DNA of 64,000 nt from Mytilus trossulus (Eukaryota): NCBI RefSeq assembly GCF_036588685.1, contig NC_086379.1, positions 40,238,001 to 40,302,000 of the forward strand. Direction: 5' to 3'. The translations under genes and the position numbers were made by a program. How positions within the stretch are numbered: position 1 is the stretch's first letter; every line of letters starts with the position of its first letter. This document shows positions 1 through 58,525 of the stretch, piece after piece. The notes beneath the pieces were generated by a model, which was given only the letters and a program-made list of their open reading frames with translations, was not told where the DNA came from and did not search any database.

Positions 1-67
1 AGAATATGGCCAGAGAAAATTAAAAGTGTCAACATATAAATAGTACACATTGAATATGTTTATTTCA

Positions 68-130
68 CAAGACAAGACAAGACAAGACAAGACAAGACAA
101 GTTGAAGACAAGACAAGACAAGACAACAAG
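68..130 (+). repeat. (GACAA)n pentanucleotide microsatellite
   Basis: About 10 GACAA units with one interruption, read directly. Confidence 0.9.
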
Positions 131-1111
131 ATATACATGTATATATACATGAATCTAAAACACACTTTCATGTCTGTTGTCTAGTTATTAAAAAAAACCA
201 TACATATATCTTACTGAAATTATTTATTTCAAAATTTAATAAAGTATTCAAATATGTTGAAATTAACAATCACAAAAGTTGCATTTCAGCAACCATTCAT
301 TAAAAATTAACAATGCAAAACTCTTTAATCAGTACAATCTTTTCTTTCTCTTAAGCTGTATTTCACCAAAAAAATACTCTTCTTTGTCATACCTTGCTTG
401 TAAGCTCTAGTTTGTTTATTTTACATTCATGAAATAACAACAAAGTGTATGTTTGAGTATGAAACAAACTGAAAATACTGAACATGACCATCAATGATTT
501 TTCCACTTGTGATTATGTTAATTAATGCAATAATCATACAATGTTTATCAAAACATACACAAGTACTTAACATGCTGTTAAATTCACCACATGAAGAAAT
601 GAGTGCTGGTCAACGTCCAAATCATTTTAGGAGAACAAGGTCTACACAAATCAAAAATTGTGAAAAATCTCTCAAATAAAATAAGTATACAAAAGTCAAG
701 TTAATCCAACTTCCTTATTTAAGGGTACTATGTATAGCTAATAATGAAGTTGCACTTCAGCAACAAACAGTTTTATAACAAAATTAAAACTGTATGATCT
801 AAAAAATCAGTTGCATTTCAGCTACTTACATGACTAATAAAAAAAAATTGAAATCTCAATAAAAATGTTCAATCTTAATATCTAATAAGTTGTGTATTTC
901 ACAAAAAAAGACTTAAATGTCAGAACAAAACCAATATCTTATTTCCATTCATCATAAGCCTTATCATGCCTAAGTTGTAGGTTCTTATGCTAGTTTCTTT
1001 TATTGTCAGGTGAAAAAAACCCAGGAAATACGGAACATGATATTGATACAAAGGCAATCAATGATAAAATCCTGCTGCTGAGTTTACCTGGTTTGATGTA
1101 AATCAATGCAA

Positions 1112-3000
1112 TTATACAATGTCCATTACCCATACAGAAGTATTTAAAATGTTGTTGAATTCGCTATGGAAAATAGTAAAATTTTCATAATTTCTTGGTA
1201 TTCTGAGAACACGACCACATGTATGGGCTATTGGTCGACGCCCAAAACCATCAAGAACTACAAATTCAACAGTGATTGTATCCTTCCCATCCAAAATTAA
1301 ATCTGAACCAGTGCAAAATCTAAGAAATTTTTTCAACAATACTTTATCAAGTTCTCTAACATACCGCTGAAGGTGGTTCATAACTTCACGTTCCAAATTA
1401 GACAAATTATCTGAAAAATGCAGCATTTTGGTAACTTTGCGATTGCTGGGTTCCATTTTACTGTATATTTCTGTCAAATTCTCATAAGAAAGAGACTGTC
1501 CGAGTTGAGTTAATATCTTGGCCCAAACATCAGTTATAAAGTTGCACTCCTGAACCATTTCCTTATGTGAGATTTCTAGCAAAATACGTTTAATGCTTTC
1601 TTTTGTGACTGCAGACCTGCAGCTATGATTCTCTAAAGCTTCTATAAGTTCATCATTATCCACTGACTCGTAATCTTTTAAAGCAGTTGAAAATAATGTT
1701 TTGTCTTCCTCAGTGATAAAACAAAGAAAATTTTCCATTAAATCTGACTTAAACTTTCCATACATTGCATTTTCCATAACAATTATGGAAAGTCCAATGG
1801 GCAAGTAATTGGCTATCTGCCATCCTTAAATATAATTCTGCCAATGGACAGCCACTGCTCCTCTTGAAAATCGTGTCTTATTGTAGGGACTTTCTGTGAA
1901 TTTCCAATGCAACAATTGTCCATAAACTCATTCCAAAATTCAGTAAGGCAATCTCTAAAAATTCCTTCCCCTACCCCTTCTTCCGCTTTTCCAGTTGGCA
2001 ATATCATACTGACATCAAAAAATGTAGCATACATTATTGTTGGATCTGAAAATATTTTCATCATTTCTATCATTGAATTTCCTCTATGAACCCTAATTTT
2101 CACAGAATGGAATGGATCAAGAAATAATTGTTCATTATTTATTAATCCAGGACCATCGGCGATTATTCCAAGACTATTAGTGATTATTCCAGGATCATTG
2201 GCGATATCAATATCAGCCAATACAGGTCCAAACTGAATTTCATCATCACTGCATATGTTCAAACTGGTATGCTCATTATAAGAATTATGAGAACTGTTAT
2301 TTTCATGATTTTCTAACATCAACAGCTGTGAAACACTTTCTTGGTCTTCATTTTCTTTGGTCATTGTTGTTGAATTCTTTTCTTGTTCAGTGTTATCCCT
2401 TTCTTTAGGTACAGTTAGTAAATAAAACCTTAACAGCCTCATTTTACTTCGGTCATAAATATTCTCTACAGACAAATCTAAATTAGCTGACTGGCGTTTA
2501 AAGTCCATGATGTCAACCACAAATTTTTCAATCTTACCCCTGGGTGATATTCCTTCTGGAAAGTAAAGTGTTAAAGCTGTTTCTTTTATGGTACTCACTA
2601 GAGTATCTTTATCAACAACAAGATGTCTCGTCCCCCCTCCAGTTGGCCCGCGAACTTGTTTCATCCTATCTCCTTCTTTCATCAGCCAACCAAGTTCTAT
2701 ACGCCTTTCACTTTTTGCTGCATGATCATTTCCAATATTCTTGGAAGTAGAAGGATTGTCATCACTATCACTTGAGCTTTCATCTATCGGTATATCTTTT
2801 TTTGTTTTAAACAAGTTTCTTTTTGATGATGGATGGAGTCTTTTTCTTATCTTATGTAATAGTGTCTTCTTTTTTTTGGACTTTGAACCTGTACCACCCT
2901 GGTTCTTACAAAAATCTTTCACAGCTATCCTGTCCCCATAGATAGGGATGTACTTTGCCAGTTCATCATCAGACAAAAATAATATCACTTGGCAATCAAG
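1112..3000 (-). CDS. HECT-domain E3 ubiquitin ligase (G2E3-like), main coding exon, with a 1-nt frameshift at about 1826
   Basis: ORFs 1813-2988 and 1112-1804 join if one base is added: ...GRIIFK|GWQIANYLPIGLS. HECT motifs are GEGIFRDCLTEFW, KFLRFCTGSD and the catalytic RRPIAHTCGRVLRIP. The splice acceptor atattttcag at 3001-3010 is in frame (LDCQVILFLSDDELAKY). It could be a young pseudogene or an assembly indel. Confidence 0.85.
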
Positions 3001-3079
3001 CTGAAAATATCAAAGAGACAAATGTTGATATAAGAGCTTGTATCATTTTGTTTGTACAACAGATGTATGTCAATATACA

Positions 3080-3667
3080 ACAGAGCCTGAAATTGCTCAC
3101 CTTGCAATTTACACTTTCTATTTACAACAATATTAACTAGAGGCTCTTTTTAGTCACGTTGACTTATTTGTAGATCTTACTTTGCTGAGCATTGTTGCTG
3201 CTTACAGTTTATCTCTATCTATACTATATAGTATTCAAGGTGATAACAAAAAAATGCAAAATTTCTTTAAAATTACCAATTGGGGGCATCAACCCAACAA
3301 CCAGTTGTCCAATTCATCTGAAAATTACTAAGTGGATATGTATTGACTTGACAAACGATTTAACCCCTTGACAGATTTGTTCTATTAAAGTGCTTTGGTT
3401 TTTGAGTTATAAGCTAAAAACTGCATTTTCCCCTGATGTTCTATTTTTAGCCATGGTGGCCATCTTGTCGGTCGGCCGGGTCACCTGACACATTTTTTAA
3501 CTAGTTACCCTAATGATGATTGTGGCCAAGTTTGATTTAAATTGTCCCAGTAGTTTCAGAGGAGAAGATTTTTGTAAGAGTTAAAGACGACGGACGACGA
3601 CAGACAACGACGGACGCAAAGTGATGGGAAAAGCTCACTTGGCCCTTTGGCCCAGGTGAGCTAAAAA
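3080..3667 (-). mobile_element. Non-autonomous Helentron-type (HINE-like) element in the HECT intron
   Basis: The minus strand starts TTTTTAGCTCACCTGG...GTGAGCT (subterminal hairpin) followed by a (CGT/GTC)n microsatellite. The far end has GGTGAGC..TTCAGGCTC and GAGCCTCTAGTT. This is the architecture known for bivalve HINE elements. Confidence 0.65.
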
Positions 3668-3926
3668 TATGGTTAAAAATAGATTTGAGGAGAACAGCTT
3701 GACATAAGTATAATTTTTTATGTGTGCAGATTTTAATAATATATGTTGCCTTTTTAAAAAAAAAGCTGTTTGAAAACATTTTATTTCTAATTTCAGTCTA
3801 GCCTTTGTTAGTACGACTTTGACCATGACATTTGATTGATGGATGGTGGTTTTAAAAACATGGCATTCAGATGCATATTCATAGTCTTTTTCTTATAAAT
3901 TGTAATATATTCAAATTCATGCTTAC

Positions 3927-3992
3927 CTTATCTTCTTCTATCTTGTCTACAGGAATGTTTCTTTCTTTTAAAAATTCTATCAGGGAGACCAT
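3927..3992 (-). CDS. First coding exon of the HECT gene (MVSLIEFLKERNIPVDKIEEDK)
   Basis: 66-nt ATG-initiated exon ending in AAG|gtaagc, phase 0. It splices in frame to the acceptor at 3000 and completes a SAM-like N-terminus. The repaired protein is about 651 aa. Confidence 0.75.
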
Positions 3993-4246
3993 TTTTCTTT
4001 GAAATTTCTATCAAAGATACAATCAATAATTAATTCTTATCAAAATACATTCATTTTGCAATAAAAATGTTTTTTTTTAAACTGTGAGGGCTACAATACT
4101 GTTTTGCTACTAATTTTTGATACACAATAGTTTCTGTCTATTGCATCAACTCCTGAACATGCTGGATAGCTTTAAATTTGACAATATGTATACAGAGATG
4201 TTTATTTACTAAATAATGTTAATTTTAGTTTATGACATGTGCAAAA

Positions 4247-4710
4247 TAAAATTGAGAATGAAAAAAGGAAATCTGTCAAAGAGACAGCAACCTGATGCGA
4301 ACAGAGAGCAGAAAACAGATGAAGGCCACCAACAGATCATCATCACAGCAAGGCAATGCTTTGGCTGGCCCCTAAACAAAAACATGTACACATTTAGGGA
4401 CGAAATCAAAAGATCAATGTAAGATTAAAAACTTAATTCAAATAGTTTGGGGGTGGGGGTTGAACTGCTGCACAAATTTGGTTATCCGACATTGATTTTT
4501 ACATATATCCATATGGGTCAATCAATTTTTCTCAAATTAAGTTAATAGGGGGGTAGGGGGGTCAGTGAAAAAACTATTTGAATTGAGTTTTTTATCCTTC
4601 ATTGAACTTTTGATGTCGTCCCTTAGTGATAAACGACATCATACTATAAACATCAACATATATATGAACTAAAATTAAAAATCATAAAAGACTAATTATT
4701 AATAAAGGCC
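4247..4710 (+). repeat. Dispersed SINE/Helentron-like repeat (family A, 'AAAATTGAGAATGGAAATGGGGAATGTGTCAAAGAGAC'), degenerate copy split by a MITE
   Basis: Similar by eye to copies at 26958-27087 (+), 37497-38089 (-) and 7290-8040. Confidence 0.6.
4397..4622. mobile_element. 226-bp PIF/Harbinger (Tourist-like) MITE
   Basis: 23-bp TIRs GGGACGAAATCAAAAGATCAATG / GGGACGACATCAAAAGTTCAATG, flanked by TTA on both sides (4394-4396, 4623-4625). Confidence 0.8.
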
Positions 4711-5353
4711 ACATTTAATGATTCAGTATCAATTTTATATTGTTTTACTTTTTTAACCAGATACAGTAAGTGGTGTCATATATGCTACTTATTTATATAC
4801 AATGTTTTGCTAAGTAAGCATCCCCATGCTTGGATGATGGTCAAATTGAGGGGTGAAGCCGGACCATGCATACATTTTCTGCTCAGTTTAGATCAAATTT
4901 TGGTGGCCAAGGTGTTTTTGAGATTATACCAATTTGTACAAAAATATGGAGAATAATTCAAATATTGGTCAAAGTCAGTCTGCCTCCTAGTTTATGGACA
5001 TACACATGATGTGACATAAATCACCTTCTTCGTTCGGTTGTACGATCTTTGCCTTTGGGATCAGATTAAATTGCGTTCCAAAGATGGGTGGGGAAAGGAA
5101 CGATTATCGTCACGGTGGTAACTTCAATATTTTTTTGTAAGATGTCCCCGGGTGAATGTGCCATTTCTCCATTTAAAATATATCCATCTTTCTATATATA
5201 TATAATACATTAAAATTGTGTATCCATATTATTTATATTGAAATAAACAGAGATTGATCTGTACTTATATATATATAATATATGTAATTTTATTAACCAA
5301 CTAAGAGTATGTTGGATGTGTACGGATTGAGTGTTTAGTCTTAGAGGCATGAT

Positions 5354-5745
5354 TTTTTATTAATTGTTAGTGGCTTTGAACTAGCTGTCAGATAACTGCG
5401 AATACTCTCAGATCTGTTCATAATGTCTTTTTGTGTCGGGATGTATAAATACCCGGCCACGTCCACTTGTATTTTGTGTCTATCTGATGAGTTCAGCCTT
5501 TTTAAACTGATTTTTATAGTTCGTTCTTATGTTGTACTGTTATACCACTGTCCCAGGTTAGGGGGCGGGTTGGGATCCCGCTAACATGGTTTAACCCCGC
5601 CACATTATTTATGTATGTGCCTGTCCCAAGTCAGGAGCCTGAACAACACAAACATTAACAATTATAGCCTGGTCACCTTACGGCCTTCAACAATGAGCAA
5701 AGCCCATACCTCATATAGTCAGCTATAAAAGGCCACGATAAGATA
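5354..5745. repeat. Rearranged copy of SINE-like family B
   Basis: 5354-5641 is the reverse complement of the family B part seen at about 56895-57180. 5642-5745 matches 55904-55996 in forward orientation. Confidence 0.7.
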
Positions 5746-5964
5746 GCCATTTCAAAAAAGAAAGTACCCCACCCTTTCCCATTTCCGAAAACCACTATAT
5801 AGAATACCTTTTATTGTTTTGAATAAAAAAAGAAGCTTACCTTACATACATAAACCAATTTGTAAACCTCTTTCAATTTAGTCTTCTTGAACACATGGTA
5901 ATGTCAGCTTGAGCTTTATTCTTCAAACGTGTGGAGCAACATGCAGTTATCTGTTCCTACTTAT

Positions 5965-6296
5965 TTTGTGCGCACATTATATTATGTCGTGCGCACAGTA
6001 TATTATGTTGTGCGCACAATATATTTAAATTGAGCGCACAATATATTATGTTGTGCGCACAATATATTTAAGTTGTGCGCACAGTATATTATGTTGTGCG
6101 CACAATATATTTAAGTTGTGCGCACAATATATTATTTTGTGCGCACAATATATTATTTTGTGCGCACAATATATTATTTTGTGCGCACAATATATTTAAG
6201 TTGTGCGCACAATATATTTAAGTTGTGCGCACAATATATTATGTTGTGCGCACAATATATATTTTTTTCTTTGCAGGTCCCTAGCGGGGCTCCGTA
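5965..6296 (-). mobile_element. Terminal inverted repeat of an IS3EU-like DNA transposon (orphan end; partner presumably upstream of the window)
   Basis: About 14 tandem 20-22-bp units with core TTGTGCGCACAA, ending ...GTCCCTAGCGGGGCTCCGTA, the same terminus as the elements at 6368-13335. TAY..RTA termini with 6-bp TSDs are the described IS3EU signature. Confidence 0.75.
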
Positions 6297-6367
6297 CAAA
6301 CGCAAAGATATCATCAAAATGCTGATAAAATAATAATAAAAAAAACAACAACAAAAAACCAAAAACC

Positions 6368-9300
6368 TACGGAGCCCCGCTAGGGATATACAAAGAAAAA
6401 AAAAAATATTGTGCGCACAAAATAATATATTGTGCGCACAACTTAAATATATTGTGCGCACAAAATAATATATTGTGCGCACAACTTAAATATATTGTGC
6501 GCACAACATAATATACTGTGGGCACAACTTAAATATAGTGTGCGCACAACTTAAATATAGTGTGCGCACAACTTGAATATAGTGTGCGCATAACTTACAC
6601 ATATTGTGCGCATAACTTAAATATACTGTGCGCACTCAAATAATATGGTGTGCTCCCAAAATTCGGAAAACAGTTTTCACTTGACCATGACCTCATTTTA
6701 CATGTAAAGTGTTCGTGGTTTAGACAAAATCTCAGATACCAAATTCAATAGTTCTTCTATATTTGGTTGTATTGAACGATTTTAATGGCTAAATGTTCAC
6801 TTCACAGGTGTCATCTGACTTTGGCATACTCCATTTTTAGGGTTAAGTGGTCCAGCAAAGTGAAATGTTTGTGTTTTGGTGTATTTCTCGGATACTATAA
6901 GTATTTAGTTAGATATATATTTGGGGTATAGAATGTTTGTATGGTGAAATTGTCTATCTTGCAATTATATTAACCTGACCTTGATTTTATAGTCATGGTT
7001 CATTGGTCCATGTTATTTGATTCTTGTTTGGTATTTTTTTCAGATACTATAAAGAATAAATTAACAATATTTTTTTATGGAATGATTGTTATGTATATAT
7101 ATTTGGCTAGTCGGTATCATCTGACCTTGACTTTGCTTTCATGGTTTATTTGTTACTGTTAAATATCTCAGAATTGGTCTGTTTTTCAGATACGATGATA
7201 AAGGTATAGTTAAACTTTATTTAATGTACAAAATAATTATAAGGCTCTCAAATCATATAAGTGGTGTTTCTCAGATACATTTGGTTCTTCAATACAGCAA
7301 GAAAAAATCCCGCACCCAAATGCGTGCTTCAGCTGGCCTATAAACAAACATATGGACTAGTTCAGTGATAATGGACGTCATACAACTTAACAGTTGTTTT
7401 TCGTTTCTCGTTTTTTATATAAATTAGACCGTTGGTTTTCCCGTTTGAAAGGTTTTACACTAGTAATTTTGGAGACCCTTTATAGCTTTCTGTTCGGTGT
7501 GAGCCTAAGCTATGTGTTGAAGACCGTACCGTGACCTATAATGGTTTACTTTTATAAATTGTGACTTATAGATGGAGAGTTGTCTCATTTTCACTCATAC
7601 CACCTCTTCCTTTTTTATCCAAAGTATATACAAGAAACTAAAATTAAAAATCCTACAAGACCAACAAAGGCCAGAAGCTCCTGACCTTGGGCAGGCACAA
7701 AAATGCGGCGGAGTTAAACATGTTTTGTGAGATCTCAACCCTCCTTTTATACCTCTAGCCAAATTGAATGCAGATTAAAAAAAAACCACAAACACAGCAA
7801 TACTGACAGTAAAGAAGCCCGTGTCCGTTGTCAGAATAGGTATCAAATGAAACTTAACAAAATGACAATGATACATTAAAAAACAAGGATTACTAGCAGT
7901 TACTGATATGCCAGCTCCACACCTCAATTAAACTGATTGAAAGATTATGTTTTAATCATATGAATATCAAGCACAATCCTTCCCGTTAGGTGTTTAGTAT
8001 CATACCATCATAAAAATATGTGAGAAGAATATAACCCGTATTTGTATGAGCTATGGTGTATATGTATATACTGTAGTTGTCTCTTTCGATTGATCGCGAT
8101 CAATCGGGCCTAAAGGTTTTGAATAAATGATACTCCAAAACGGACCATATTTGGAAAAATGAATCATAATTGTTTCGATTGTTTTCAAAATATTTCACTG
8201 AGGAATTTCTTTGACTATTCCTAAATGGTATCGTAACATTTCAATTTCATAATGAGTACGAACAACATACCGTAAAATTTTATAATGAAATCGATCAAAA
8301 ATAGATACTATAAGTGACCTCTTGTCCTCTTCTATTAATCAGAATGAAACTATAACTTGACCTGAAACATTTGTATACAAGGCTTTATTTAATTTAAATC
8401 ATAATAGGCATACTGCTCTATGTCGGGAGCTTGTTATTCAGTGATTGTCGTTTATTTGTATGGTTCATATCTGTTTATCGTTTTGTTATAGTCATTTTGA
8501 GCCGTATAGTTTGCTGTTTGGTGTGAGCCAACGCTCCGTGATAGGGACCGTAATATAACCAATGATTGTTAACTTAAAGTCTTTTAATAAATTATGACTT
8601 GGTTGGAGAGCTGTCTCATTGGCACTCATATTGATTCTTCTGCTTTGTATGTACCCAGTTTTATCTTTATTTGATCACAACTTCATGGTGAATTTCTTAG
8701 ACTGAACACACCGTCATATTTCAATAACGAACAGTACATCTTTGGTGAGAACCGTACTTAACCATGATCAAACATAGTCACCTTTGATAAAAAAAAAAAA
8801 AAAAAACCAAAAACAACAAAACAACGTGTACGTGTATTCAGTTTTCAGTGGATTTGACTTACTCTACGCTTTTACAATGATACCTTTTAAGAAACCACAT
8901 ACTTCATTGAAGTTGGTGACACTAAAACTTCATCATAAACTTTAACCAAAACATTTACAATAAACAGAGACGGACGGATGAACGGACGTAAAGACTTCTA
9001 CATATAACGACCATCTCTATCGTCAAACAGGGTAACAAAATCAAAGTCGTGAATTGAGTTACATGTCAGTCTTGAGACTCAGAGTCAATCAACATAAACA
9101 AAATATTGAGATTTTTAGACATAAAGTATAATGCATCAGTGCAAAACGTACTTTTCTTATATATGTTACAAGAAAACAGGTAAAACCATAGTATCAAAGT
9201 CTACATAAGTTCGATAGTTTCCTCGCTCTTTTGTCAAGTCTGTTTCAAACCGTTCCAATAAACTCTGATATACAGTGGAGGCTTCCAATGCATAGGTTGG

Positions 9301-9779
9301 TAAACCAAGTGTCAGACGAAATAAACGTAACTTCTTTAGTATTCCTGTCAGGAGTTGATACAAATGCAGTGATGAATATTTCCATGTATTCTAGCCCCAT
9401 TTCAAAAGAAACCTTATGCATTTCTTCATTCTGTCACTTTAAAAAGGAGACATTGAAGACCCATACCATGTGTAAGGTCAAAGGATTTCATGCGCACGAT
9501 ATATTTAATTTGTGAGCACAATATATTTATTTTGTGCGCACGATATATTTAAGTTGTGCGCACAATATATTTAAGTTGTGCGCACAATATATTTAAGTTG
9601 TGCGCACAATATATTTAAGTTGTGCGCACAATATATTTAAATTGTGCGCACAATATATTATTTTGTGCGCACACTATATTATTGTGTGCGCACACTATAT
9701 TATTTTGTGCGCACAATTTATTTTAGTTGTGCGCACAATATATTTTCTTTTCTTTGCATGTCCCTAGCAGGGCTCCGTA
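6368..9779 (+). mobile_element. Non-autonomous IS3EU-like DNA transposon, copy 1 (3412 bp)
   Basis: Starts TACGGAGCCCCGCTAGGG and ends CCCTAGCAGGGCTCCGTA. About 300-bp TTGTGCGCACAA arrays at both ends, nested host repeats inside, and a decayed transposase-like piece at about 9183-9433 (-). Confidence 0.85.
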
Positions 9780-9945
9780 ATTTTCTATGAAGTGTTTTAT
9801 TGATTTTTTTTGCATATTAAAAATGCTTTTTCTATGACGCGTTTTATTAATTTTAATGCACATTAAAAATGCATTTTTTGTGAAGCGATTTATTGATTTT
9901 TTTGTCTATTCGTTTAGTTGAATTTGTGTTGTCTGTTTTGGTTTT

Positions 9946-12900
9946 TACGGAGCCCTGCTAGGGACATGCAAAGAAAAGAAAATATATTGTGCGCACAACT
10001 AAAATAAATTGTGCGCACAAAATAATATAGTGTGCGCACACAATAATATAGTGTGCGCACAAAATAATATATTGTGCGCACAATTTAAATATATTGTGCG
10101 CACAACTTAAATATATTGTGCGCACAACTTAAATATATTGTGCGCACAACTTAAATATATCGTGCGCACAAAATAAATATATTGTGCTCACAAATTAAAT
10201 ATATCGTGCGCATGAAATCCTTTGACCTTACACATGGTATGGGTCTTCAATGTCTCCTTTTTAAAGTGACAGAATGAAGAAATGCATAAGGTTTCTTTTG
10301 AAATGGGGCTAGAATACATGGAAATATTCATCACTGCATTTGTATCAACTCCTGACAGGAATACTAAAGAAGTTACGTTTATTTCGTCTGACACTTGGTT
10401 TACCAACCTATGCATTGGAAGCCTCCACTGTATATCAGAGTTTATTGGAACGGTTTGAAACAGACTTGACAAAAGAGCGAGGAAACTATCGAACTTATGT
10501 AGACTTTGATACTATGGTTTTACCTGTTTTCTTGTAACATATATAAGAAAAGTACGTTTTGCACTGATGCATTATACTTTATGTCTAAAAATCTCAATAT
10601 TTTGTTTATGTTGATTGACTCTGAGTCTCAAGACTGACATGTAACTCAATTCACGACTTTGATTTTGTTACCCTGTTTGACGATAGAGATGGTCGTTATA
10701 TGTAGAAGTCTTTACGTCCGTTCATCCGTCCGTCTCTGTTTATTGTAAATGTTTTGGTTAAAGTTTATGATGAAGTTTTAGTGTCACCAACTTCAATGAA
10801 GTATGTGGTTTCTTAAAAGGTATCATTGTAAAAGCGTAGAGTAAGTCAAATCCACTGAAAACTGAATACACGTACACGTTGTTTTGTTGTTTTTGGTTTT
10901 TTTTTTATTTTTTTATCAAAGGTGACTATGTTTGATCATGGTTAAGTACGGTTCTCACCAAAGATGTACTGTTCGTTATTGAAATATGACGGTGTGTTCA
11001 GTCTAAGAAATTCACCATGAAGTTGTGATCAAATAAAGATAAAACTGGGTACATACAAAGCAGAAGAATCAATATGAGTGCCAATGAGACAGCTCTCCAA
11101 CCAAGTCATAATTTATTAAAAGACTTTAAGTTAACAATCATTGGTTATATTACGGTCCCTATCACGGAGCGTTGGCTCACACCAAACAGCAAACTATACG
11201 GCTCAAAATGACTATAACAAAACGATAAACAGATATGAACCATACAAATAAACGACAATCACTGAATAACAAGCTCCCGACATAGAGCAGTATGCCTATT
11301 ATGATTTAAATTAAATAAAGCCTTGTATACAAATGTTTCAGGTCAAGTTATAGTTTCATTCTGATTAATAGAAGAGGACAAGAGGTCACTTATAGTATCT
11401 ATTTTTGATCGATTTCATTATAAAATTTTACGGTATGTTGTTCGTACTCATTATGAAATTGAAATGTTACGATACCATTTAGGAATAGTCAAAGAAATTC
11501 CTCAGTGAAATATTTTGAAAACAATCGAAACAATTATGATTCATTTTTCCAAATATGGTCCGTTTTGGAGTATCATTTATTCAAAACCTTTAGGCCCGAT
11601 TGATCGCGATCAATCGAAAGAGACAACTACAGTATATACATATACACCATAGCTCATACAAATACGGGTTATATTCTTCTCACATATTTTTATGATGGTA
11701 TGATACTAAACACCTAACGGGAAGGATTGTGCTTGATATTCATATGATTAAAACATAATCTTTCAATCAGTTTAATTGAGGTGTGGAGCTGGCATATCAG
11801 TAACTGCTAGTAATCCTTGTTTTTTAATGTATCATTGTCATTTTGTTAAGTTTCATTTGATACCTATTCTGACAACGGACACGGGCTTCTTTACTGTCAG
11901 TATTGCTGTGTTTGTGGTTTTTTTTTAATCTGCATTCAATTTGGCTAGAGGTATAAAAGGAGGGTTGAGATCTCACAAAACATGTTTAACTCCGCCGCAT
12001 TTTTGTGCCTGCCCAAGGTCAGGAGCTTCTGGCCTTTGTTGGTCTTGTAGGATTTTTAATTTTAGTTTCTTGTATATACTTTGGATAAAAAAGGAAGAGG
12101 TGGTATGAGTGAAAATGAGACAACTCTCCATCTATAAGTCACAATTTATAAAAGTAAACCATTATAGGTCACGGTACGGTCTTCAACACATAGCTTAGGC
12201 TCACACCGAACAGAAAGCTATAAAGGGTCTCCAAAATTACTAGTGTAAAACCTTTCAAACGGGAAAACCAACGGTCTAATTTATATAAAAAACGAGAAAC
12301 GAAAAACAACTGTTAAGTTGTATGACGTCCATTATCACTGAACTAGTCCATATGTTTGTTTATAGGCCAGCTGAAGCACGCATTTGGGTGCGGGATTTTT
12401 TCTTGCTGTATTGAAGAACCAAATGTATCTGAGAAACACCACTTATATGATTTGAGAGCCTTATAATTATTTTGTACATTAAATAAAGTTTAACTATACC
12501 TTTATCATCGTATCTGAAAAACAGACCAATTCTGAGATATTTAACAGTAACAAATAAACCATGAAAGCAAAGTCAAGGTCAGATGATACCGACTAGCCAA
12601 ATATATATACATAACAATCATTCCATAAAAAAATATTGTTAATTTATTCTTTATAGTATCTGAAAAAAATACCAAACAAGAATCAAATAACATGGACCAA
12701 TGAACCATGACTATAAAATCAAGGTCAGGTTAATATAATTGCAAGATAGACAATTTCACCATACAAACATTCTATACCCCAAATATATATCTAACTAAAT
12801 ACTTATAGTATCCGAGAAATACACCAAAACACAAACATTTCACTTTGCTGGACCACTTAACCCTAAAAATGGAGTATGCCAAAGTCAGATGACACCTGTG

Positions 12901-13335
12901 AAGTGAACATTTAGCCATTAAAATCGTTCAATACAACCAAATATAGAAGAACTATTGAATTTGGTATCTGAGATTTTGTCTAAACCACGAACACTTTACA
13001 TGTAAAATGAGGTCATGGTCAAGTGAAAACTGTTTTCCGAATTTTGGGAGCACACCATATTATTTGAGTGCGCACAGTATATTTAAGTTATGCGCACAAT
13101 ATGTGTAAGTTATGCGCACACTATATTCAAGTTGTGCGCACACTATATTTAAGTTGTGCGCACACTATATTTAAGTTGTGCCCACAATATATTATGTTGT
13201 GCGCACAATATATTTAAGTTGTGCGCACAATATATTATTTTGTGCGCACAATATATTTAAGTTGTGCGCACAATATATTATTTTGTGCGCACAATATATT
13301 TTTTTTTCTTTGTATGTCCCTAGCGGGGCTCCGTA
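9946..13335 (-). mobile_element. Non-autonomous IS3EU-like DNA transposon, copy 2 (3390 bp), inverted relative to copy 1
   Basis: Near-exact reverse complement of 6368-9779. Mirrored ORFs are identical (9231-9515 vs 10188-10472). It differs by one 22-bp array unit and a few substitutions. Confidence 0.85.
10270..10520 (+). pseudogene. Decayed N-terminus of an IS3EU-type transposase (mirror copy at about 9183-9433, minus strand)
   Basis: Fragments across frames (SFEMGLEYMEI, HHCICI, GILKKLRLFR, ISEFI, SEETIELM*TL) follow the order I recall for the HTH region of these transposases (YFxxGxxYxEI...HxIxIS.RTLKRILxxLxLFRR...V.xFI...ETVR.L..LDP). It lies just inside the TIR array. Recognition is by eye. 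Confidence 0.45.
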
Positions 13336-13651
13336 GAAAATATTTAGGTTATTAACACAAAAATTAATAACACGCATTATAGAAAATTCAATATATTATG
13401 GGCAAAAAAATAATACAACACCTTAAATTGCACTTTTAATGTAACGTATGTGCTACAGATTGCCACGGAGTAAGTCTTCTTTCGATTTTGCCACAGTGTA
13501 CTATTAGTATCATTTTTATCTCGAATCGTGGTCACATACACATTGAATGTATAACTCAGATATATTTTGAAAGTCCCATCACATGATGATGTCTGTGAAA
13601 CACAAAACGATGACTCTATCTTTACTGGTTCAATAACGTTATTGTAAGCAG

Positions 13652-14035
13652 ATAAAAGAGGGACGAAAGATACCAGAGGGAGAGTCAAACTCAAAGATCG
13701 AAATCAAACTGACAACACCATAGCTAGAAATAAAAAGACAAACAGACAAATAATAATACAGAAGACACAACATAAAAAACTAATAAAAAGACTAAGCAAC
13801 ATGAACCCAACAAAAAACTGGAGGTGATCTCAGGTGCTCAGGACGGGTAAGCAGATCCTGCTCCACATGTGGCACCCGTCGTGTTGCGTATGTTATTACT
13901 AATCCGGTAAATAGTATAATTTGGTAGGTCACATTCGTGAAAAGGAAGGGTATTAAAGTTACGACATAAGGAACATATCCGATATCATCTGTGAAACGGT
14001 TATTCCATAACGGTCAACAAACTCGTGATGGCGTG
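13652..14035 (+). repeat. Dispersed repeat family C ('AAGAGGGACGAAAGATACCAGAGGGACAGTC')
   Basis: Reverse-complement fragments at 32205-32277, 40358-40533 and 47020-47215. Confidence 0.7.
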
Positions 14036-14399
14036 ATAACATGTATCAAGAAATTTTTTATATGATGCCCAAGTCAATTAAAAGCAGTCCACATGTTGGA
14101 TAAAATTAACGGTACCAATTGTCTTGCACCAGATGCGCATTTCGACAATACATGTCTCTTCAGTGATGCTCGTGGCCAAAATATTTGAAACCCAAAGCTT
14201 AGATAAAAGATGAAGAGCTATAATCCAAAAGGTCCAAAAAGTATAACCAAATCCGTGAATTGACTCTAAGTTAATTTTTATCATTTGTTCAAGGCGACTG
14301 CTTGGTTGATGTTACACCACATCCCTTGTTGTTAACAAAAAAGTGCTTGTATTGAACATTCCTGATTAGACTTTAAAATTATGCATCCAACACAACCAA

Positions 14400-14716
14400 A
14401 TAATTTAATTTTGGATGTAACGCGTCTCCTGATTGGCTGACGTTATTTTGTTATGAGCCCATAGACATAATTTAGTCATGTGACCGTTATTACGTCATCA
14501 ACGTTTTTTCATGGTTTTCAACGGTTTAAAATGGAATTTAGAATTAAATTATAAGAAATGACTAATATTTTTTTCTGTCTATTCGAGATAACATAAATAA
14601 ATGTGGTGCACACTGTTAAATAACCCGCTACGCGCGTTATTCAGTGTGTACCTCATTTTTTATGTTATTTCTTCATAGACAGAAAAAATATTACTGTTAC
14701 AGTCATTCCTTAAATA
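14400..14716. mobile_element. Short non-autonomous DNA-transposon-like repeat (tentatively Crypton-type)
   Basis: Contains CTGATTGGCTGAC...AATAACCCGCTACGCGCGTTATT (internal hairpin)...CATTCCTTAAATA. A similar layout is at about 35905-36265. The superfamily call is tentative. Confidence 0.4.
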
Positions 14717-55850: not shown

Positions 55851-56363
55851 TATAAAAAAGAAGATGTGATATGATGAGACAACTATCCACAAAAGTCCAA
55901 AATGACACAAACCTTAACAACTATAGGTCACCGTACATTCTTCAACAATGAGCAAAGCCCATACCGCATAGTCAGCTATAAAAGGCCCCGATAAGACAAT
56001 GTAAAACAATTCAAACGAGAAAACTGACGGCCTTCTTTATGTAAAAAAATTAACGAAAAACAAATATGTAACACATAAACAAACGACAACCACTGAATTA
56101 CAGGCTCCTGACTTGGGACAGGCACATACATAAATAATGTGGCGGGGTAAAACATGTTAGCGGGTTCCCAACCCTCCCCCTAACCTGGGACAGTATTATA
56201 ACAGTACAACATACATGTAAGAACGAACTATAAAAATCAGTTGAAAAAGGCTTAACTCATCAGATAGACAAAAAATACAAGTGGACGTGGCCGGGTACTT
56301 ATACATCCCGACACAAAAAGACACAATGAACAGATCTGAGAGTACTCGCAGTTATCTGACAGC
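55851..56363 (+). repeat. SINE-like family B element seeding the downstream tandem array
   Basis: Begins TATAAAAAAGAAGATGTG...GAGACAACTATCCA and carries the core CAGGCTCCTGACTTGGGACAGGCACATAC...GGCGGGG. Confidence 0.7.
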
Positions 56364-58525
56364 GAGGATACACACACTTTATCGAACCTTAAAGGAAAAA
56401 TGTAAACCAACTAAACCTCAAGGAATGTCTATATGTCGGCGATATGTCTCTCTGATCGGAAGTTATTGAACGGAATTAGAATAGTTACAAGTAGTGCCCT
56501 TGCCTGTAATACCGTTCTGTAGATAGCATTACGATTTCCGGCTTCGATATATCTTAGTCTTGTGTCGTCTCATTGTTTCACTAGTACGTGTGAAGCATTT
56601 AAATACATACAAAGTCAATAAGGACAAAACACATTTATTGTTTATTTGATACTAGTAGTTAACTTCCCAGTTAAGCTTTGTTACAAAATGGCTCAAACAT
56701 ATATTAATTGTTTTATTGTTGGTGTTTAACACCACTTTCATCACACTACAATACAATATATCATTGCGACCAGTTTAAATTGGAAGGGAAGTTGGAGAGA
56801 ACAACCGACTTTCACTCCTGCAATATGAGAGGAAACATAAAAGGTATTACTGTCAGTAAAAACAAACATAAACAAACGACAACCACTGAATTACAGGCTC
56901 CTGACTTGGGACAGTCACATACATAAATAATGTGGCGGGGTTAAACACGTTAGCGGGATCCCAACCCTCCCCTAACCTGGGACAGTATTATAACAGTACA
57001 ACATAAGAACGAACTATAAAAATCAGTTGAAAAGGGCTTAACTCATCAGATAGACAAAAATACAAGTGAACATGGACGGGTACTTATACATCTTGACACA
57101 AAAAGACACAATGAACAGATCTGAGAGTACTTGCAGTTATCTGACAGCTAGTTCAAAGCCACTAACAACTAATAAAAAAATAGTTAAAAAAAAACCAATG
57201 CATTCTTAATAGCACGAACACCTATAAGACGAGGATACACACACTTTATCGAACCTTAAAGGAAAAATATAAACCAACTAAACCTCAAGGAATGTCTATA
57301 TGTCGGCGATATGTCTCTCTGATCGGAAGTTATTGAACGGAATTAGAATAGTTACAAGTAGTGCCCTTGTCTGTAATACCGTTCTGTAGATAGCATTACG
57401 ATTTCCGGCTTCGATATATCTTAGTCTTGTGTCGTCTCATTGTTTCACTAGTACGTGTGAAGCATTTAAATACATACAAAGTCAATAAAGACAAAACACA
57501 TTTATTGTTTATTTGATACTAGTAGTTAACTTCCCAGTTAAACTTTGTTACAAAATGGCTCAAACATATATTAATTGTTTTATTGTTGGTGTTTAACACC
57601 ACTTTCATCACACTACAATACAATATATCATTGCGACCAGTTTAAATTGGAAGGGAAGTTGGAGAGAACAACCGACTTTCACTCCTACAATATGAGAGGA
57701 AACATAAAAGGTATTACTGTCAGTAAAAACAAACATAAACAAACGACAACCACTGAATTACAGGCTCCTGACTTGGGACAGTCACATACATAAATAATGT
57801 GGCGGGGTTAAACACGTTAGCGGGATCCCAACCCTCCCCTAACCTGGGACAGTATTATAACAGTACAACATAAGAACGAACTATAAAAATCAGTTGAAAA
57901 AGGCTTAACTCATCAGATAGACAAAAATACAAGTGAACATGGACGGGTACTTATACATCTTGACACAAAAAGACACAATGAACAGATCTGAGAGTACTTG
58001 CAGTTATCTGACAGCTAGTTCAAAGCCACTAACAACTAATAAAAAAATAGTTAAAAAAAACCCCAATGCATTCTTAATAGCACGAACACCTATAAGACGA
58101 GGATACACACACTTTATCGAACCTTAAAGGAAAAATGTAAACCAACTAAACCTCAAGGAATGTCCTTGCCTGTAATACCGTTCTGTAGATAGCATTACGA
58201 TTTCCGGCTTCGATATATCTTAGTCTTGTGTCGTATCATTGTTCCACCAGTACGTGTTAAGCATTTAAATACATACAAAGTTAATAAAGACAAAACACAT
58301 TTATTGTTTATTTGATACTAGTAGTTAACTTCCGAGTTAAACCTTGTTACAAAATTGCTCAAGAATTATATATTATGGTTTGGTTGTTGGTATTAAACGC
58401 CACTTTCATCACACTATAAGATATCATTGCGACCAGTTTACATTGGAAGGGGAAGCCGGAGAGAACAACCGCCTTTCACTCGTGCAATATAATAGGAAAC
58501 ATAAAAGGTATTACTGTCAGTAAAA
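56072..58525 (+). repeat. Tandem array with 867-bp period (about 2.8 copies)
   Basis: Duplicate ORFs at 56708 and 57575 are offset by 867. The marker GAGGATACACACACTTTATCGAACC occurs at about 56364, 57231 and 58099. Confidence 0.92.

What the first reader, a model, noticed from the sequence alone, without database searches (positions are those of the whole stretch)
6362..13341. 7-kb palindrome whose target-site duplications are reciprocally swapped: the 166-bp spacer has been flipped
Seen: the flanks read AAAACC [copy 1] ATTTTC ...spacer... GGTTTT [copy 2] GAAAAT. Neither copy has a matching TSD as assembled. Reverse-complementing the spacer (9780-9945) gives AAAACC[1]AAAACC and GAAAAT[2]GAAAAT. 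The flipped spacer also restores strand composition (A/C-rich like 6300-6367) and continues the degenerate AATAA.AC.C...ATAGAAAA repeat found after 13335. Inference: two real insertions about 160 bp apart in opposite orientation, followed by crossover between the arms (a flip-flop inversion) or alternative-end transposition. An assembler crossing arms is the alternative explanation.
Basis: partly seen in the sequence, partly recalled or inferred. Interest (0 to 1): 0.8.

Follow-up and report, generated by a model that had tools for sequence, protein, structure and literature searches.

The report
Twin mussel transposons flanking inverted DNA
Two almost identical copies of a mobile DNA element lie head-to-head in a mussel chromosome with the short stretch between them turned around, a known kind of transposon-made inversion seen here in a little-studied element family.

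Summary
Window 6368-9779 and 9946-13335 are inverted copies of a 3.4-kb non-coding IS3EU-type DNA transposon. They differ by 4 substitutions and one 22-nt repeat unit, while every other genomic copy compared is below 96% identical full-length.

The flanking 6-mers are exchanged reciprocally, and 6 nt is this family's target duplication length.

A contig from another mollusc run carries the empty allele. In it the reverse complement of the 166-nt spacer runs straight into the right flank with one copy of the duplicated 6-mer. So the spacer as assembled is inverted relative to the ancestral state.

The pattern recurs. On contig C8, two sister copies (99.88% identical) bracket about 98 kb with the same reciprocal exchange. 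Contig C17 holds both empty sites with the inner flanks in the opposite orientation. A cluster on C11 shows two like ends integrated into an element's own body.

I favour a one-step aberrant transposition, using hybrid ends from sister chromatids or a replicative route (0.5). Rivals are a local hop followed by arm-to-arm recombination (0.3) and an assembler's orientation choice (0.1). No raw long reads were available, so orientation in the animal and ongoing flipping remain untested.

This is a known kind of event in a new family. The scan noted this stretch before (s1-827499).

The parts
1..6296 (+). Right part of an 11,824-nt autonomous-type element of the same family. It starts 5,527 nt before the window. 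Its right-end subterminal array is at about 5950-6296.
   Evidence: The left terminal repeat is at L033 position 3473 with flank CAAACG, and the right end at 6296 is followed by CAAACG. A 291-aa ORF hits Pfam PF24764 integrase core at 2.8e-27, and an ORF at window 1112-1801 hits HECT at 4.5e-07.
6297..6367 (.). 71 nt of ancestral DNA between the upstream element and copy 1. It starts with that element's CAAACG duplicate and ends with site X.
6362..6367 (+). Site X target duplication, AAAACC, next to the A end of copy 1.
6368..9779 (+). Copy 1, a 3412-nt non-autonomous IS3EU-type element in A-end to B-end orientation. It has TA..TA termini, a 19-nt terminal inverted repeat, and 21/22-nt subterminal arrays at both ends.
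   Evidence: No ORF inside it exceeds 94 aa.
9780..9945 (-). 166-nt spacer, inverted relative to the ancestral allele. It holds 2.7 units of a 46-nt repeat that continues on the plus strand after 13335.
   Evidence: Run X2 record 17. Single copy in the assembly.
9780..9785 (-). Reverse complement of site Y duplication (ATTTTC), next to the B end of copy 1.
9940..9945 (-). Reverse complement of site X duplication (GGTTTT), next to the B end of copy 2.
9946..13335 (-). Copy 2, 3390 nt, sister of copy 1 in inverted orientation (B end at 9946, A end at 13335).
13336..13341 (+). Site Y target duplication, GAAAAT, next to the A end of copy 2.
   Evidence: The empty allele has it once.
13336..13640 (+). 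Unique right flank, which begins with the continuation of the 46-nt repeat.

Best explanation
Shown:
- The 7-kb palindrome is made of two sister copies of a 3.4-kb non-autonomous IS3EU-type DNA transposon, in inverted orientation.
- It sits 71 nt from an 11.8-kb transposase-bearing relative.
- The 166 nt between the copies is inverted relative to the ancestral, element-free allele.
- Each of the two 6-nt target duplications is split between the copies in reverse complement. Each duplication is attached to one A end and one B end.

Inferred: one element first inserted normally at one of the two sites. In a single aberrant transposition, one A end and one B end then integrated together into a target about 160 nt away on the same DNA. 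The two ends came either from the two sister-chromatid copies (hybrid-element insertion, also called sister-chromatid transposition) or from an element that was nicked but not excised and then copied (intramolecular replicative transposition 'in trans').

Either route gives, in one step, a second inverted copy, inversion of the intervening DNA, and exactly this reciprocal distribution of old and new duplications. Arm-to-arm recombination may have flipped the spacer again afterwards, and this cannot be seen in the sequence.
For: 1. The arms differ by 4 substitutions and one 22-nt unit. The nearest other full-length copies compared are 95.7-95.9% identical, and no other locus reaches 99% over 400 nt or more.
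2. The exchange is reciprocal, and each duplication is attached to one A and one B end.
3. The empty allele, with the spacer in the opposite orientation and a single GAAAAT, is seen in run X2 record 17.
4. The pattern recurs. On C8, L004 and L003 are inverted and 99.88% identical (4 mismatches, 2 gaps), with flanks GTTTCA|..|GTTTCT and TGAAAC|..|AGAAAC.
5. Contig C17 holds both empty C8 sites. About 1.4 kb of each inner flank is on the opposite strand and each outer flank is collinear, all at 97-98%. None of the 95 exact terminal repeats lies on C17.
6. Among the 30 loci compared, the only pairs at 99% or more are these two and one segmental duplication that includes its flanks. No sister pair has matched duplications.
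7. On C11, a 6-mer inside the element (copy 1 positions 2323-2328) is duplicated in reverse complement with a B end at both junctions and the element's own right part inverted. Ends from two copies were therefore used together. Recombination on a nested insertion would instead put an A end at the second junction.
8. Delprat et al. state that hybrid-element insertion gives the same product as ectopic recombination, except that the copies are identical rather than chimeric (PMC2775673, passages). He et al. describe the same signature for IS26 and Tn4401 (PMC4471558, passages).
Against: - The product of a local hop with donor retention followed by recombination between the arms is identical base for base. 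Nothing in the window separates the two routes.
- That two-step route was seen directly in rice: a Ds element hopped 1.1 kb away in inverted orientation with matched duplications, and 33 of 300 regenerants then inverted the segment between (PMC3239180, passages).
- With a 166-nt spacer and 3.4-kb arms, recombination could flip often enough that today's orientation carries no memory of the origin.
- Two pairs is a small sample. The locus set was chosen by similarity to copy 1, with 40 of 19,300 first-look candidates scored.
- The family mostly makes ordinary insertions: 16 elements have matched duplications.
- At least four further elements have unmatched flanks without a known partner. For one of them (L005) two partner patterns found nothing.
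- Spacer orientation in the animal was not checked with reads.
Confidence: 0.5

Rival explanations
1. Two-step origin. The element hopped about 160 nt away in inverted orientation while the donor copy was kept or restored, giving two copies with ordinary matched duplications. Homologous recombination between the 3.4-kb arms then inverted the spacer, and may still flip it back and forth.
For: It gives the identical final sequence. There is an experimental precedent in rice Ac/Ds: a linked inverted pair with matched 8-nt duplications, then inversion of the 1.1-kb segment between them in 33 of 300 plants (PMC3239180, passages). The family makes ordinary insertions with 6-nt duplications. Three family members lie within about 230 nt of ancestral DNA, which fits local hopping.
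Against: It needs one more event in each of two independent pairs, including a roughly 98-kb inversion on C8. No sister pair in the unrecombined state, direct or inverted, linked or unlinked, was found among the loci compared. The C11 junctions show that this family does pair ends from different copies.
Confidence: 0.3
2. Assembly choice. Both copies are real, but the true spacer orientation is the matched one. The assembler threaded the spacer the wrong way because its two sides are identical inverted repeats.
For: All four junctions are the same in both orientations, so only reads longer than an arm (over 3.6 kb) can decide. No such reads were available. The same ambiguity applies in principle to the C8 pair.
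Against: The assembly kept the arms apart at 4 substitutions and a 22-nt indel. The window has no N. The placed sequences are 60-113 Mb long, which suggests reads much longer than 3.4 kb; the sequencing technology is not known to me. Two wrong choices out of two pairs would be needed.
Confidence: 0.1
3. Origin without transposase: a fold-back or template-switch inverted duplication of one element, or a staggered-break inversion.
For: Long palindromes can arise by fold-back repair (general knowledge, recalled).
Against: Both breakpoints carry exactly 6-nt duplications at the exact element termini, which is the family's integration signature. The spacer is present once, not duplicated. A staggered-break model with the element as one duplicated block predicts an extra copy of the GAAAAT 6-mer left of copy 2, and it is absent.
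Confidence: 0.03

Closest known systems
Hybrid-element insertion of Drosophila P elements and sister-chromatid transposition of maize/rice Ac/Ds (alternative transposition)
   Same: One 5' and one 3' end taken from two copies at the same site on sister chromatids integrate nearby. The product is an inversion flanked by two identical inverted copies with exchanged target duplications (PMC2775673 passages, including the legend of its Figure S1; PMC3429523 and PMC3239180 passages).
   Different: Those are P and hAT superfamily cut-and-paste elements with 8-nt duplications, and the events were followed in crosses. Here the family is IS3EU, the duplication is 6 nt, the event is inferred from one assembly, and the transposition chemistry is unknown.
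Intramolecular replicative transposition 'in trans' of bacterial IS26, Tn4401 and IS1-type elements
   Same: The original and a new inverted copy bracket the inverted segment. The target duplication appears in inverted orientation, one copy per element, and the original duplication is likewise split (PMC4471558 passages).
   Different: That is bacterial and plasmid-borne, with a demonstrated replicative mechanism. No replicative DDE transposition has been shown for an animal DNA transposon to my knowledge (recalled, not searched exhaustively).
Galileo-mediated inversions 2j, 2q7 and 2z3 of Drosophila buzzatii
   Same: [quoted passage not shown]
   Different: The Galileo copies are chimeric and distinct, which led the authors to ectopic recombination. 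Here the copies are sisters at 99.88% identity, so chimerism cannot be seen. The inverted segment in the window is only 166 nt.
Rice OsRLG5-161 inverted Ds pair
   Same: Two identical inverted copies about 1 kb apart derived from one element, and the segment between them inverts at high frequency (PMC3239180 passages).
   Different: There the matched-duplication intermediate was observed first. Here it has not been seen.
IS3EU/GingerRoot superfamily
   Same: TA..TA termini, 6-nt duplications, and an IS3/integrase-like DDE transposase in the autonomous relative (PMC10045372 passages).
   Different: I found no paper linking IS3EU to inversions. The search for 'IS3EU' plus 'inversion' gave 10 papers, 9 listed, and by title and abstract start all are genome reports (listing only).

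Membership tests
IS3EU/GingerRoot DNA transposons | TA..TA termini | tested here: met
   All ends start TACGG and end CCGTA. The criterion is from PMC10045372 (passages).
IS3EU/GingerRoot DNA transposons | Target site duplications usually 6 nt | tested here: met
   15 elements bounded by exact terminal repeats plus L025 have identical 6-mers on both sides.
IS3EU/GingerRoot DNA transposons | Autonomous members encode an IS3/integrase-type DDE transposase | tested here: met
   The adjacent 11.8-kb element with the same terminal repeat has a 291-aa ORF that hits PF24764 (integrase core) at 2.8e-27. No phylogenetic placement was done. The 3.4-kb copies themselves are non-coding.
One-step transposon-made inversion (hybrid-element insertion or replicative 'trans' pathway) | Two copies in inverted orientation bracketing the inverted segment | tested here: met
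   The ancestral orientation comes from run X2 record 17.
One-step transposon-made inversion (hybrid-element insertion or replicative 'trans' pathway) | Old and new target duplications each split between the copies in reverse complement | tested here: met
   AAAACC/GGTTTT and ATTTTC/GAAAAT, each attached to one A end and one B end.
One-step transposon-made inversion (hybrid-element insertion or replicative 'trans' pathway) | The two copies are identical at birth, not chimeric | tested here: inconclusive
   4 substitutions and one repeat-unit indel. This is compatible with sister copies, but a hop followed by recombination gives the same result.
One-step transposon-made inversion (hybrid-element insertion or replicative 'trans' pathway) | Parental allele carries a single copy at one of the two sites, and no allele has two matched insertions | not testable with these tools
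   Only the fully empty allele was seen. Also, no haplotig of this locus exists in the assembly.
Ectopic recombination between inverted transposon copies (Galileo type) | Exchanged target duplications and single-copy targets in the non-inverted allele | tested here: met
Ectopic recombination between inverted transposon copies (Galileo type) | Chimeric copies derived from two distinguishable parental insertions | tested here: inconclusive
   The arms are nearly identical, so chimerism is undetectable.
Flip-flop (ongoing) inversion | Both spacer orientations present in one individual or population | not testable with these tools
   Junction sequences are identical in both orientations. Only Logan contigs were served.

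The most novel reading that the evidence does not exclude
IS3EU elements, whose transposase is akin to bacterial IS3/IS481 enzymes and retroviral integrases, may not fully excise in animals. Instead they may transpose by a nick-join-copy (replicative) route. The window palindrome and the roughly 98-kb C8 inversion would then be 'duplicative inversions' of the kind known from IS26 and Tn3 in bacteria. That would be natural evidence for intramolecular replicative DDE transposition in an animal genome, and a route by which one element makes inversion polymorphisms without any pre-existing second copy.
Probability: 0.15. Interest if true: 0.75.

Novelty: new member of a known kind. Interest (0 to 1): 0.45.

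Why it matters
Inversions flanked by inverted transposon copies with exchanged target duplications are textbook for P, hAT and bacterial IS elements. They have not, as far as my searches show, been described for the IS3EU superfamily, whose transposition chemistry in eukaryotes is uncharacterised.

Here the same family shows the signature twice in one mussel genome, at 166 nt and at about 98 kb. Element-free alleles are available for both, and the family also shows a like-ends self-insertion.

This gives a concrete, testable handle on how IS3EU moves. It also identifies a transposon-made structural polymorphism, the C8 against C17 inversion, in a bivalve known for extreme structural variation.

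For the scan, it shows that the 'swapped duplication' reading was sound and that the palindrome is not a curiosity of one locus.

Tried and rejected
Coding capacity. ORF lists at 80 aa and 45 aa found nothing above 94 aa inside the copies, so I ran no protein search on them.

Composite transposon using the two outer ends. Rejected because the outer 6-mers (AAAACC, GAAAAT) differ.

Fold-back or staggered-break origin. Rejected on the duplication pattern (see rivals).

A second haplotype of this locus in the assembly. The spacer and the right flank are each single copy, so there is none.

Raw long reads. None were served: all 23 runs listed are Logan contigs and none holds more than 0.36 of the sampled words. 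The one read-laying run could therefore test the empty allele but not orientation in the source animal. Its output lists only a small sample of more than 305,000 pieces, so the absence of other informative contigs means nothing.

Partner search for the unmatched element L005. Two 16-nt patterns gave 0 hits each.

Wider catalogue of terminal repeats with up to 2 mismatches. There were 144 hits, but only 100 rows were listed and just 5 of those were new, so I did not pursue it. The catalogue used therefore covers the 95 exact hits only.

Edge effect of arm-to-arm gene conversion as the reason differences cluster at the outer ends. Rejected because in the C8 pair the same A-end clustering is at the inner ends.

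Gene conversion from the neighbouring element's end as the source of copy 1's three derived changes. Not supported at the one position I checked by eye.

Papers. I read passages only, using find mode, of PMC10045372, PMC4471558, PMC3429523, PMC2775673 and PMC3239180. All other titles are from search listings. Figure S1 of PMC2775673 (the models) is a supplement, and I saw only its legend.

Recalled, from no call:
- The copy-out-paste-in mechanism of bacterial IS3 elements and their end-targeted insertion.
- The P-element literature on hybrid-element insertion.
- The instability of long palindromes.
Full report
**What is there**

The window is G000:C7:40238001-40302000 of a 1.30-Gb, 541-contig assembly. 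The sequencing runs that share the stretch are molluscs. Earlier notes of this scan call the species a mussel, Mytilus trossulus. I did not test the species name.

The repeat finder gives inverted arms 6367-9637 and 10066-13336, and the tandem subterminal arrays produce a second register. Scanning for the 19-nt terminal repeat fixes the parts:
- Copy 1 is 6368-9779.
- The spacer is 9780-9945.
- Copy 2 is 9946-13335.

A global alignment of copy 1 with the reverse complement of copy 2 shows 4 substitutions (window 6387, 6405, 6516, 8796) and one 22-nt indel, which is one unit of the inner subterminal array (also the alignment). The copies have no ORF above 94 aa. The window has no N.

**The family**

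The ends are TA..TA, followed by arrays of 21/22-nt units at both ends.

The apparent solo end at about 5950-6296 is the right end of an 11,824-nt element. Its left terminal repeat lies 5,527 nt before the window, and CAAACG sits on both sides. That element has a 291-aa ORF matching Pfam PF24764, integrase core, at 2.8e-27. It also has a HECT-like ORF at 4.5e-07.

The genome holds only 95 exact terminal repeats (48 forward, 47 reverse; the control pattern gave 0). I fetched the flanks of all of them and tabulated them.
- 15 elements of 2.9-18.9 kb have identical 6-mers on both sides. L025 adds a sixteenth.
- Across 21 duplications, position 3 is A or T in 21 of 21 and position 4 in 19 of 21.

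TA..TA termini and 6-nt duplications are what Kojima gives for IS3EU/GingerRoot (PMC10045372, passages).

**The exchange, and the ancestral state**

The flanks read AAAACC|copy 1|ATTTTC and GGTTTT|copy 2|GAAAAT. Each 6-mer pair is attached to one A end and one B end, as a normal duplication would be.

Two lines show that the spacer is inverted relative to its origin.

First, the reverse complement of the spacer aligns to the right flank, so the 46-nt repeat continues there. The local score is 53 against 18 for the assembled strand, and 0 of 1000 shuffles reach 53. Base composition agrees.

Second, there is a direct empty allele in run X2, labelled a different organism from the best holder X1. 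Record 17, a 536-nt contig of depth 4.86, lies on the minus strand at 9780-9946 with letters 30-199 and on the plus strand at 13342-13678 with letters 200-536.
- That is the element-free allele at site Y, with a single GAAAAT.
- The piece stops at 9946 instead of running on into the element end, so site X is empty too.
- The evidence is one contig at low depth, with 1 other letter and 3 gaps in the spacer part, and 6 other letters and 2 gaps in the flank part.

X1 has a 322-nt contig at 13355-13676 with no differences, but it says nothing about the junction.

**Caveat on 6-mers**

Among 2209 same-side pairs of sites, 11 have reverse-complement 6-mers. Six of these are between chromosomes: GTTTTA/TAAAAC four times through duplicated sites, and ATTTTC/GAAAAT twice, both involving copy 2 of the window.

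A single coincidence is therefore not rare in this A/T-rich target set. The five same-chromosome cases are the two of the window pair, the two of the C8 pair, and one on C11.

**The arms are sisters**

The nearest other full-length copies compared (L003, L004) are 95.7-95.9% identical to copy 1. In an all-against-all BLAST of the 30 loci, only three pairs reach 99% over 400 nt or more:
- the window pair;
- L003/L004;
- L020/L021.

L020/L021 is an inverted segmental duplication that includes the flanks. Its duplication TATAGT is matched once a 12-nt terminal repeat is allowed for.

So 'two insertions' cannot mean two independent arrivals.

**The pattern recurs**

On C8, L004 (27670911-27674321, B end first) and L003 (27772017-27775448, A end first) are inverted and 99.88% identical, with 4 mismatches and 2 gap events. 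Their flanks are GTTTCA|..|GTTTCT and TGAAAC|..|AGAAAC, the same reciprocal exchange.

Contig C17 carries the region without elements.
- At about 4090058 it reads the left flank of L004, one GTTTCA, and then the reverse complement of the left flank of L003.
- At about 4129445 it reads the reverse complement of the right flank of L004, one AGAAAC, and then the right flank of L003.

BLAST extends this picture:
- The outer flanks are collinear: 1471 nt at 97.6% and 1501 nt at 98.1%.
- The inner flanks are on the opposite strand: 1384 nt at 97.3% and 1395 nt at 97.2%.

Four of four paralogous copies of the repeat that hosts site Y are also contiguous across it. None of the 95 exact terminal repeats is on C17.

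Whether C17 is the other haplotype or a paralogue is not resolved. The segment is about 98 kb on C8 and about 39 kb on C17, and I could not fetch it whole.

**Ends of different copies are used together**

On C11, an element runs from position 1 to 2328 and is followed by a B-end terminal repeat. The sequence then runs 3412 back to 2323 and is followed by a second B-end terminal repeat that opens a full inverted copy. The 6-mer at copy 1 positions 2323-2328 flanks both junctions in reverse complement.

Two B ends therefore integrated into the element's own body. This is what inward-facing ends of a pair like the window's would do. Recombination on a nested insertion would place an A end at the second junction.

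**Mechanism**

Written out, one aberrant event turns L-X-[A>B]-X-s-Y-R into L-X-[A>B]-rc(Y)-rc(s)-rc(X)-[B>A]-Y-R. In this event the B end of one sister copy and the A end of the other integrate into Y in the inverting sense. This is my derivation, and it agrees with two published descriptions:
- Case A of Figure S1 of Delprat et al., of which I saw only the legend.
- The 'trans' pathway for IS26 and Tn4401 (PMC4471558, passages).

A local inverted hop followed by recombination between the arms gives the same sequence. That route was observed in rice. A Ds element moved 1.1 kb away in inverted orientation with matched duplications, and 33 of 300 regenerants then inverted the segment between (PMC3239180, passages; PMC3429523, passages).

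I favour the one-step route at 0.5 for these reasons:
- The only two sister pairs found are both linked, both inverted and both exchanged.
- One of them spans about 98 kb, where recombination should be rare.
- No matched sister pair exists in the set.
- The family demonstrably pairs ends from different copies.

I hold the two-step route at 0.3. The sample is two pairs, the locus set is biased (40 of 19,300 candidates scored), and a 166-nt spacer between 3.4-kb arms may flip so easily that orientation has no memory.

An assembler's arbitrary choice stays at 0.1. All four junctions are identical in both orientations and I had no reads longer than an arm.

**Unexplained**

Both sister pairs show the same pattern of differences.
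- In each pair, most substitutions lie in the first 150 nt of the A end. The element positions are 20, 38 and 149 in the window pair, and 75 and 90 plus a 1-nt gap at 28 in the C8 pair.
- Each pair also differs by one unit of the B-end array.

In the window pair all three A-end changes are derived in copy 1. The A ends are outer in the window and inner on C8, so an edge effect of arm-to-arm conversion does not explain the pattern.

**Comparison and novelty**

This is the known class of transposon-made inversions with exchanged duplications, as in P, Ac/Ds, Galileo and IS26. It is seen here in IS3EU, for which my searches found no such report (listings only). The verdict is a new member of a known kind.

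The boldest reading not excluded is that IS3EU transposes replicatively in animals.

Earlier notes s1-826728 and s1-829898 gave the IS3EU lead. I checked the element boundaries, the duplication and the domains myself. Note s1-827499 is the same stretch read again.

Noticed in passing
L004 and L003 (G000:C8:27670911-27674321 and 27772017-27775448); L126 and L132 (G000:C17 about 4090058 and 4129445): A second sister pair of the same element (99.88% identical) brackets about 98 kb with reciprocally exchanged 6-nt duplications. Contig C17 carries both empty sites with the inner flanks on the opposite strand. This is a transposon-flanked inversion that differs between two copies of the region in one assembly.
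   Followed up: yes
L008 and L123 (G000:C11:30440394-30449272): A rearranged cluster. One element's right part (positions 2323-3412) is inverted in place, with a B-end terminal repeat at both junctions and an internal 6-mer duplicated in reverse complement. A full inverted copy follows, and its A end sits inside a third, truncated copy (positions about 300-2354).
   Followed up: partly
L085 (G000:C8:49625416), inside the ATTTAC-flanked unit 49622323-49638032: Abutted ends. A right end with a 7-8-nt terminal repeat, then one base, then the left end of a 12.6-kb element. The two elements together share one 6-nt duplication, as if a tandem dimer moved as a unit.
   Followed up: partly
L020 and L021 (G000:C2:76678626-76680577 and 76697521-76699475): An inverted segmental duplication (99.64% over 3.6 kb, flanks included) about 17 kb apart, carrying a deleted copy of the element. 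Its B end is followed by a 12-nt repeat of its own terminus before the matching TATAGT.
   Followed up: partly
L089 (G000:C10:40273376); L037 (C1:89202577); L094 (C11:25282410): Small terminal oddities. A truncated 17-nt terminal repeat sits directly before a full one. Two right ends are followed by a 5-nt repeat of their own last letters.
   Followed up: no
G000:C22:890840-892596, 1258497-1260251, 1634886-1636640: Three copies of a 1.7-kb member with identical, unmatched flanks (AACAGC and GATTTT). This is probably a segmental triplication.
   Followed up: no
window 6368-6520 and 9491-9745; L003 and L004: In both sister pairs the few differences cluster in the first 150 nt of the A end, and each pair differs by one 21/22-nt unit of the B-end array. 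The cause is unknown.
   Followed up: partly
window 11070-12405 and 13575-14400: Contig depth in four mollusc runs rises by two to three orders of magnitude here, and many contigs skip 11091-12136 or 12078-12320. The 3.4-kb element therefore carries nested high-copy repeats, and the right flank beyond 13575 is itself a very abundant repeat.
   Followed up: no
window 1112-2988 (minus strand): Two adjacent ORFs (230 and 391 aa) inside the upstream 11.8-kb element. The first has a weak HECT-domain match (4.5e-07).
   Followed up: partly
window 56363-58328: Three copies of a 300-nt repeat at spacings of 867 and 799 nt, at 99% and 68% identity to the first copy.
   Followed up: no
21 target duplications of the family (genome-wide): The central positions of the 6-nt target are A or T in 21 of 21 (position 3) and 19 of 21 (position 4). 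Several independent sites share ATTTTC/GAAAAT-like targets, which suggests a target preference.
   Followed up: partly
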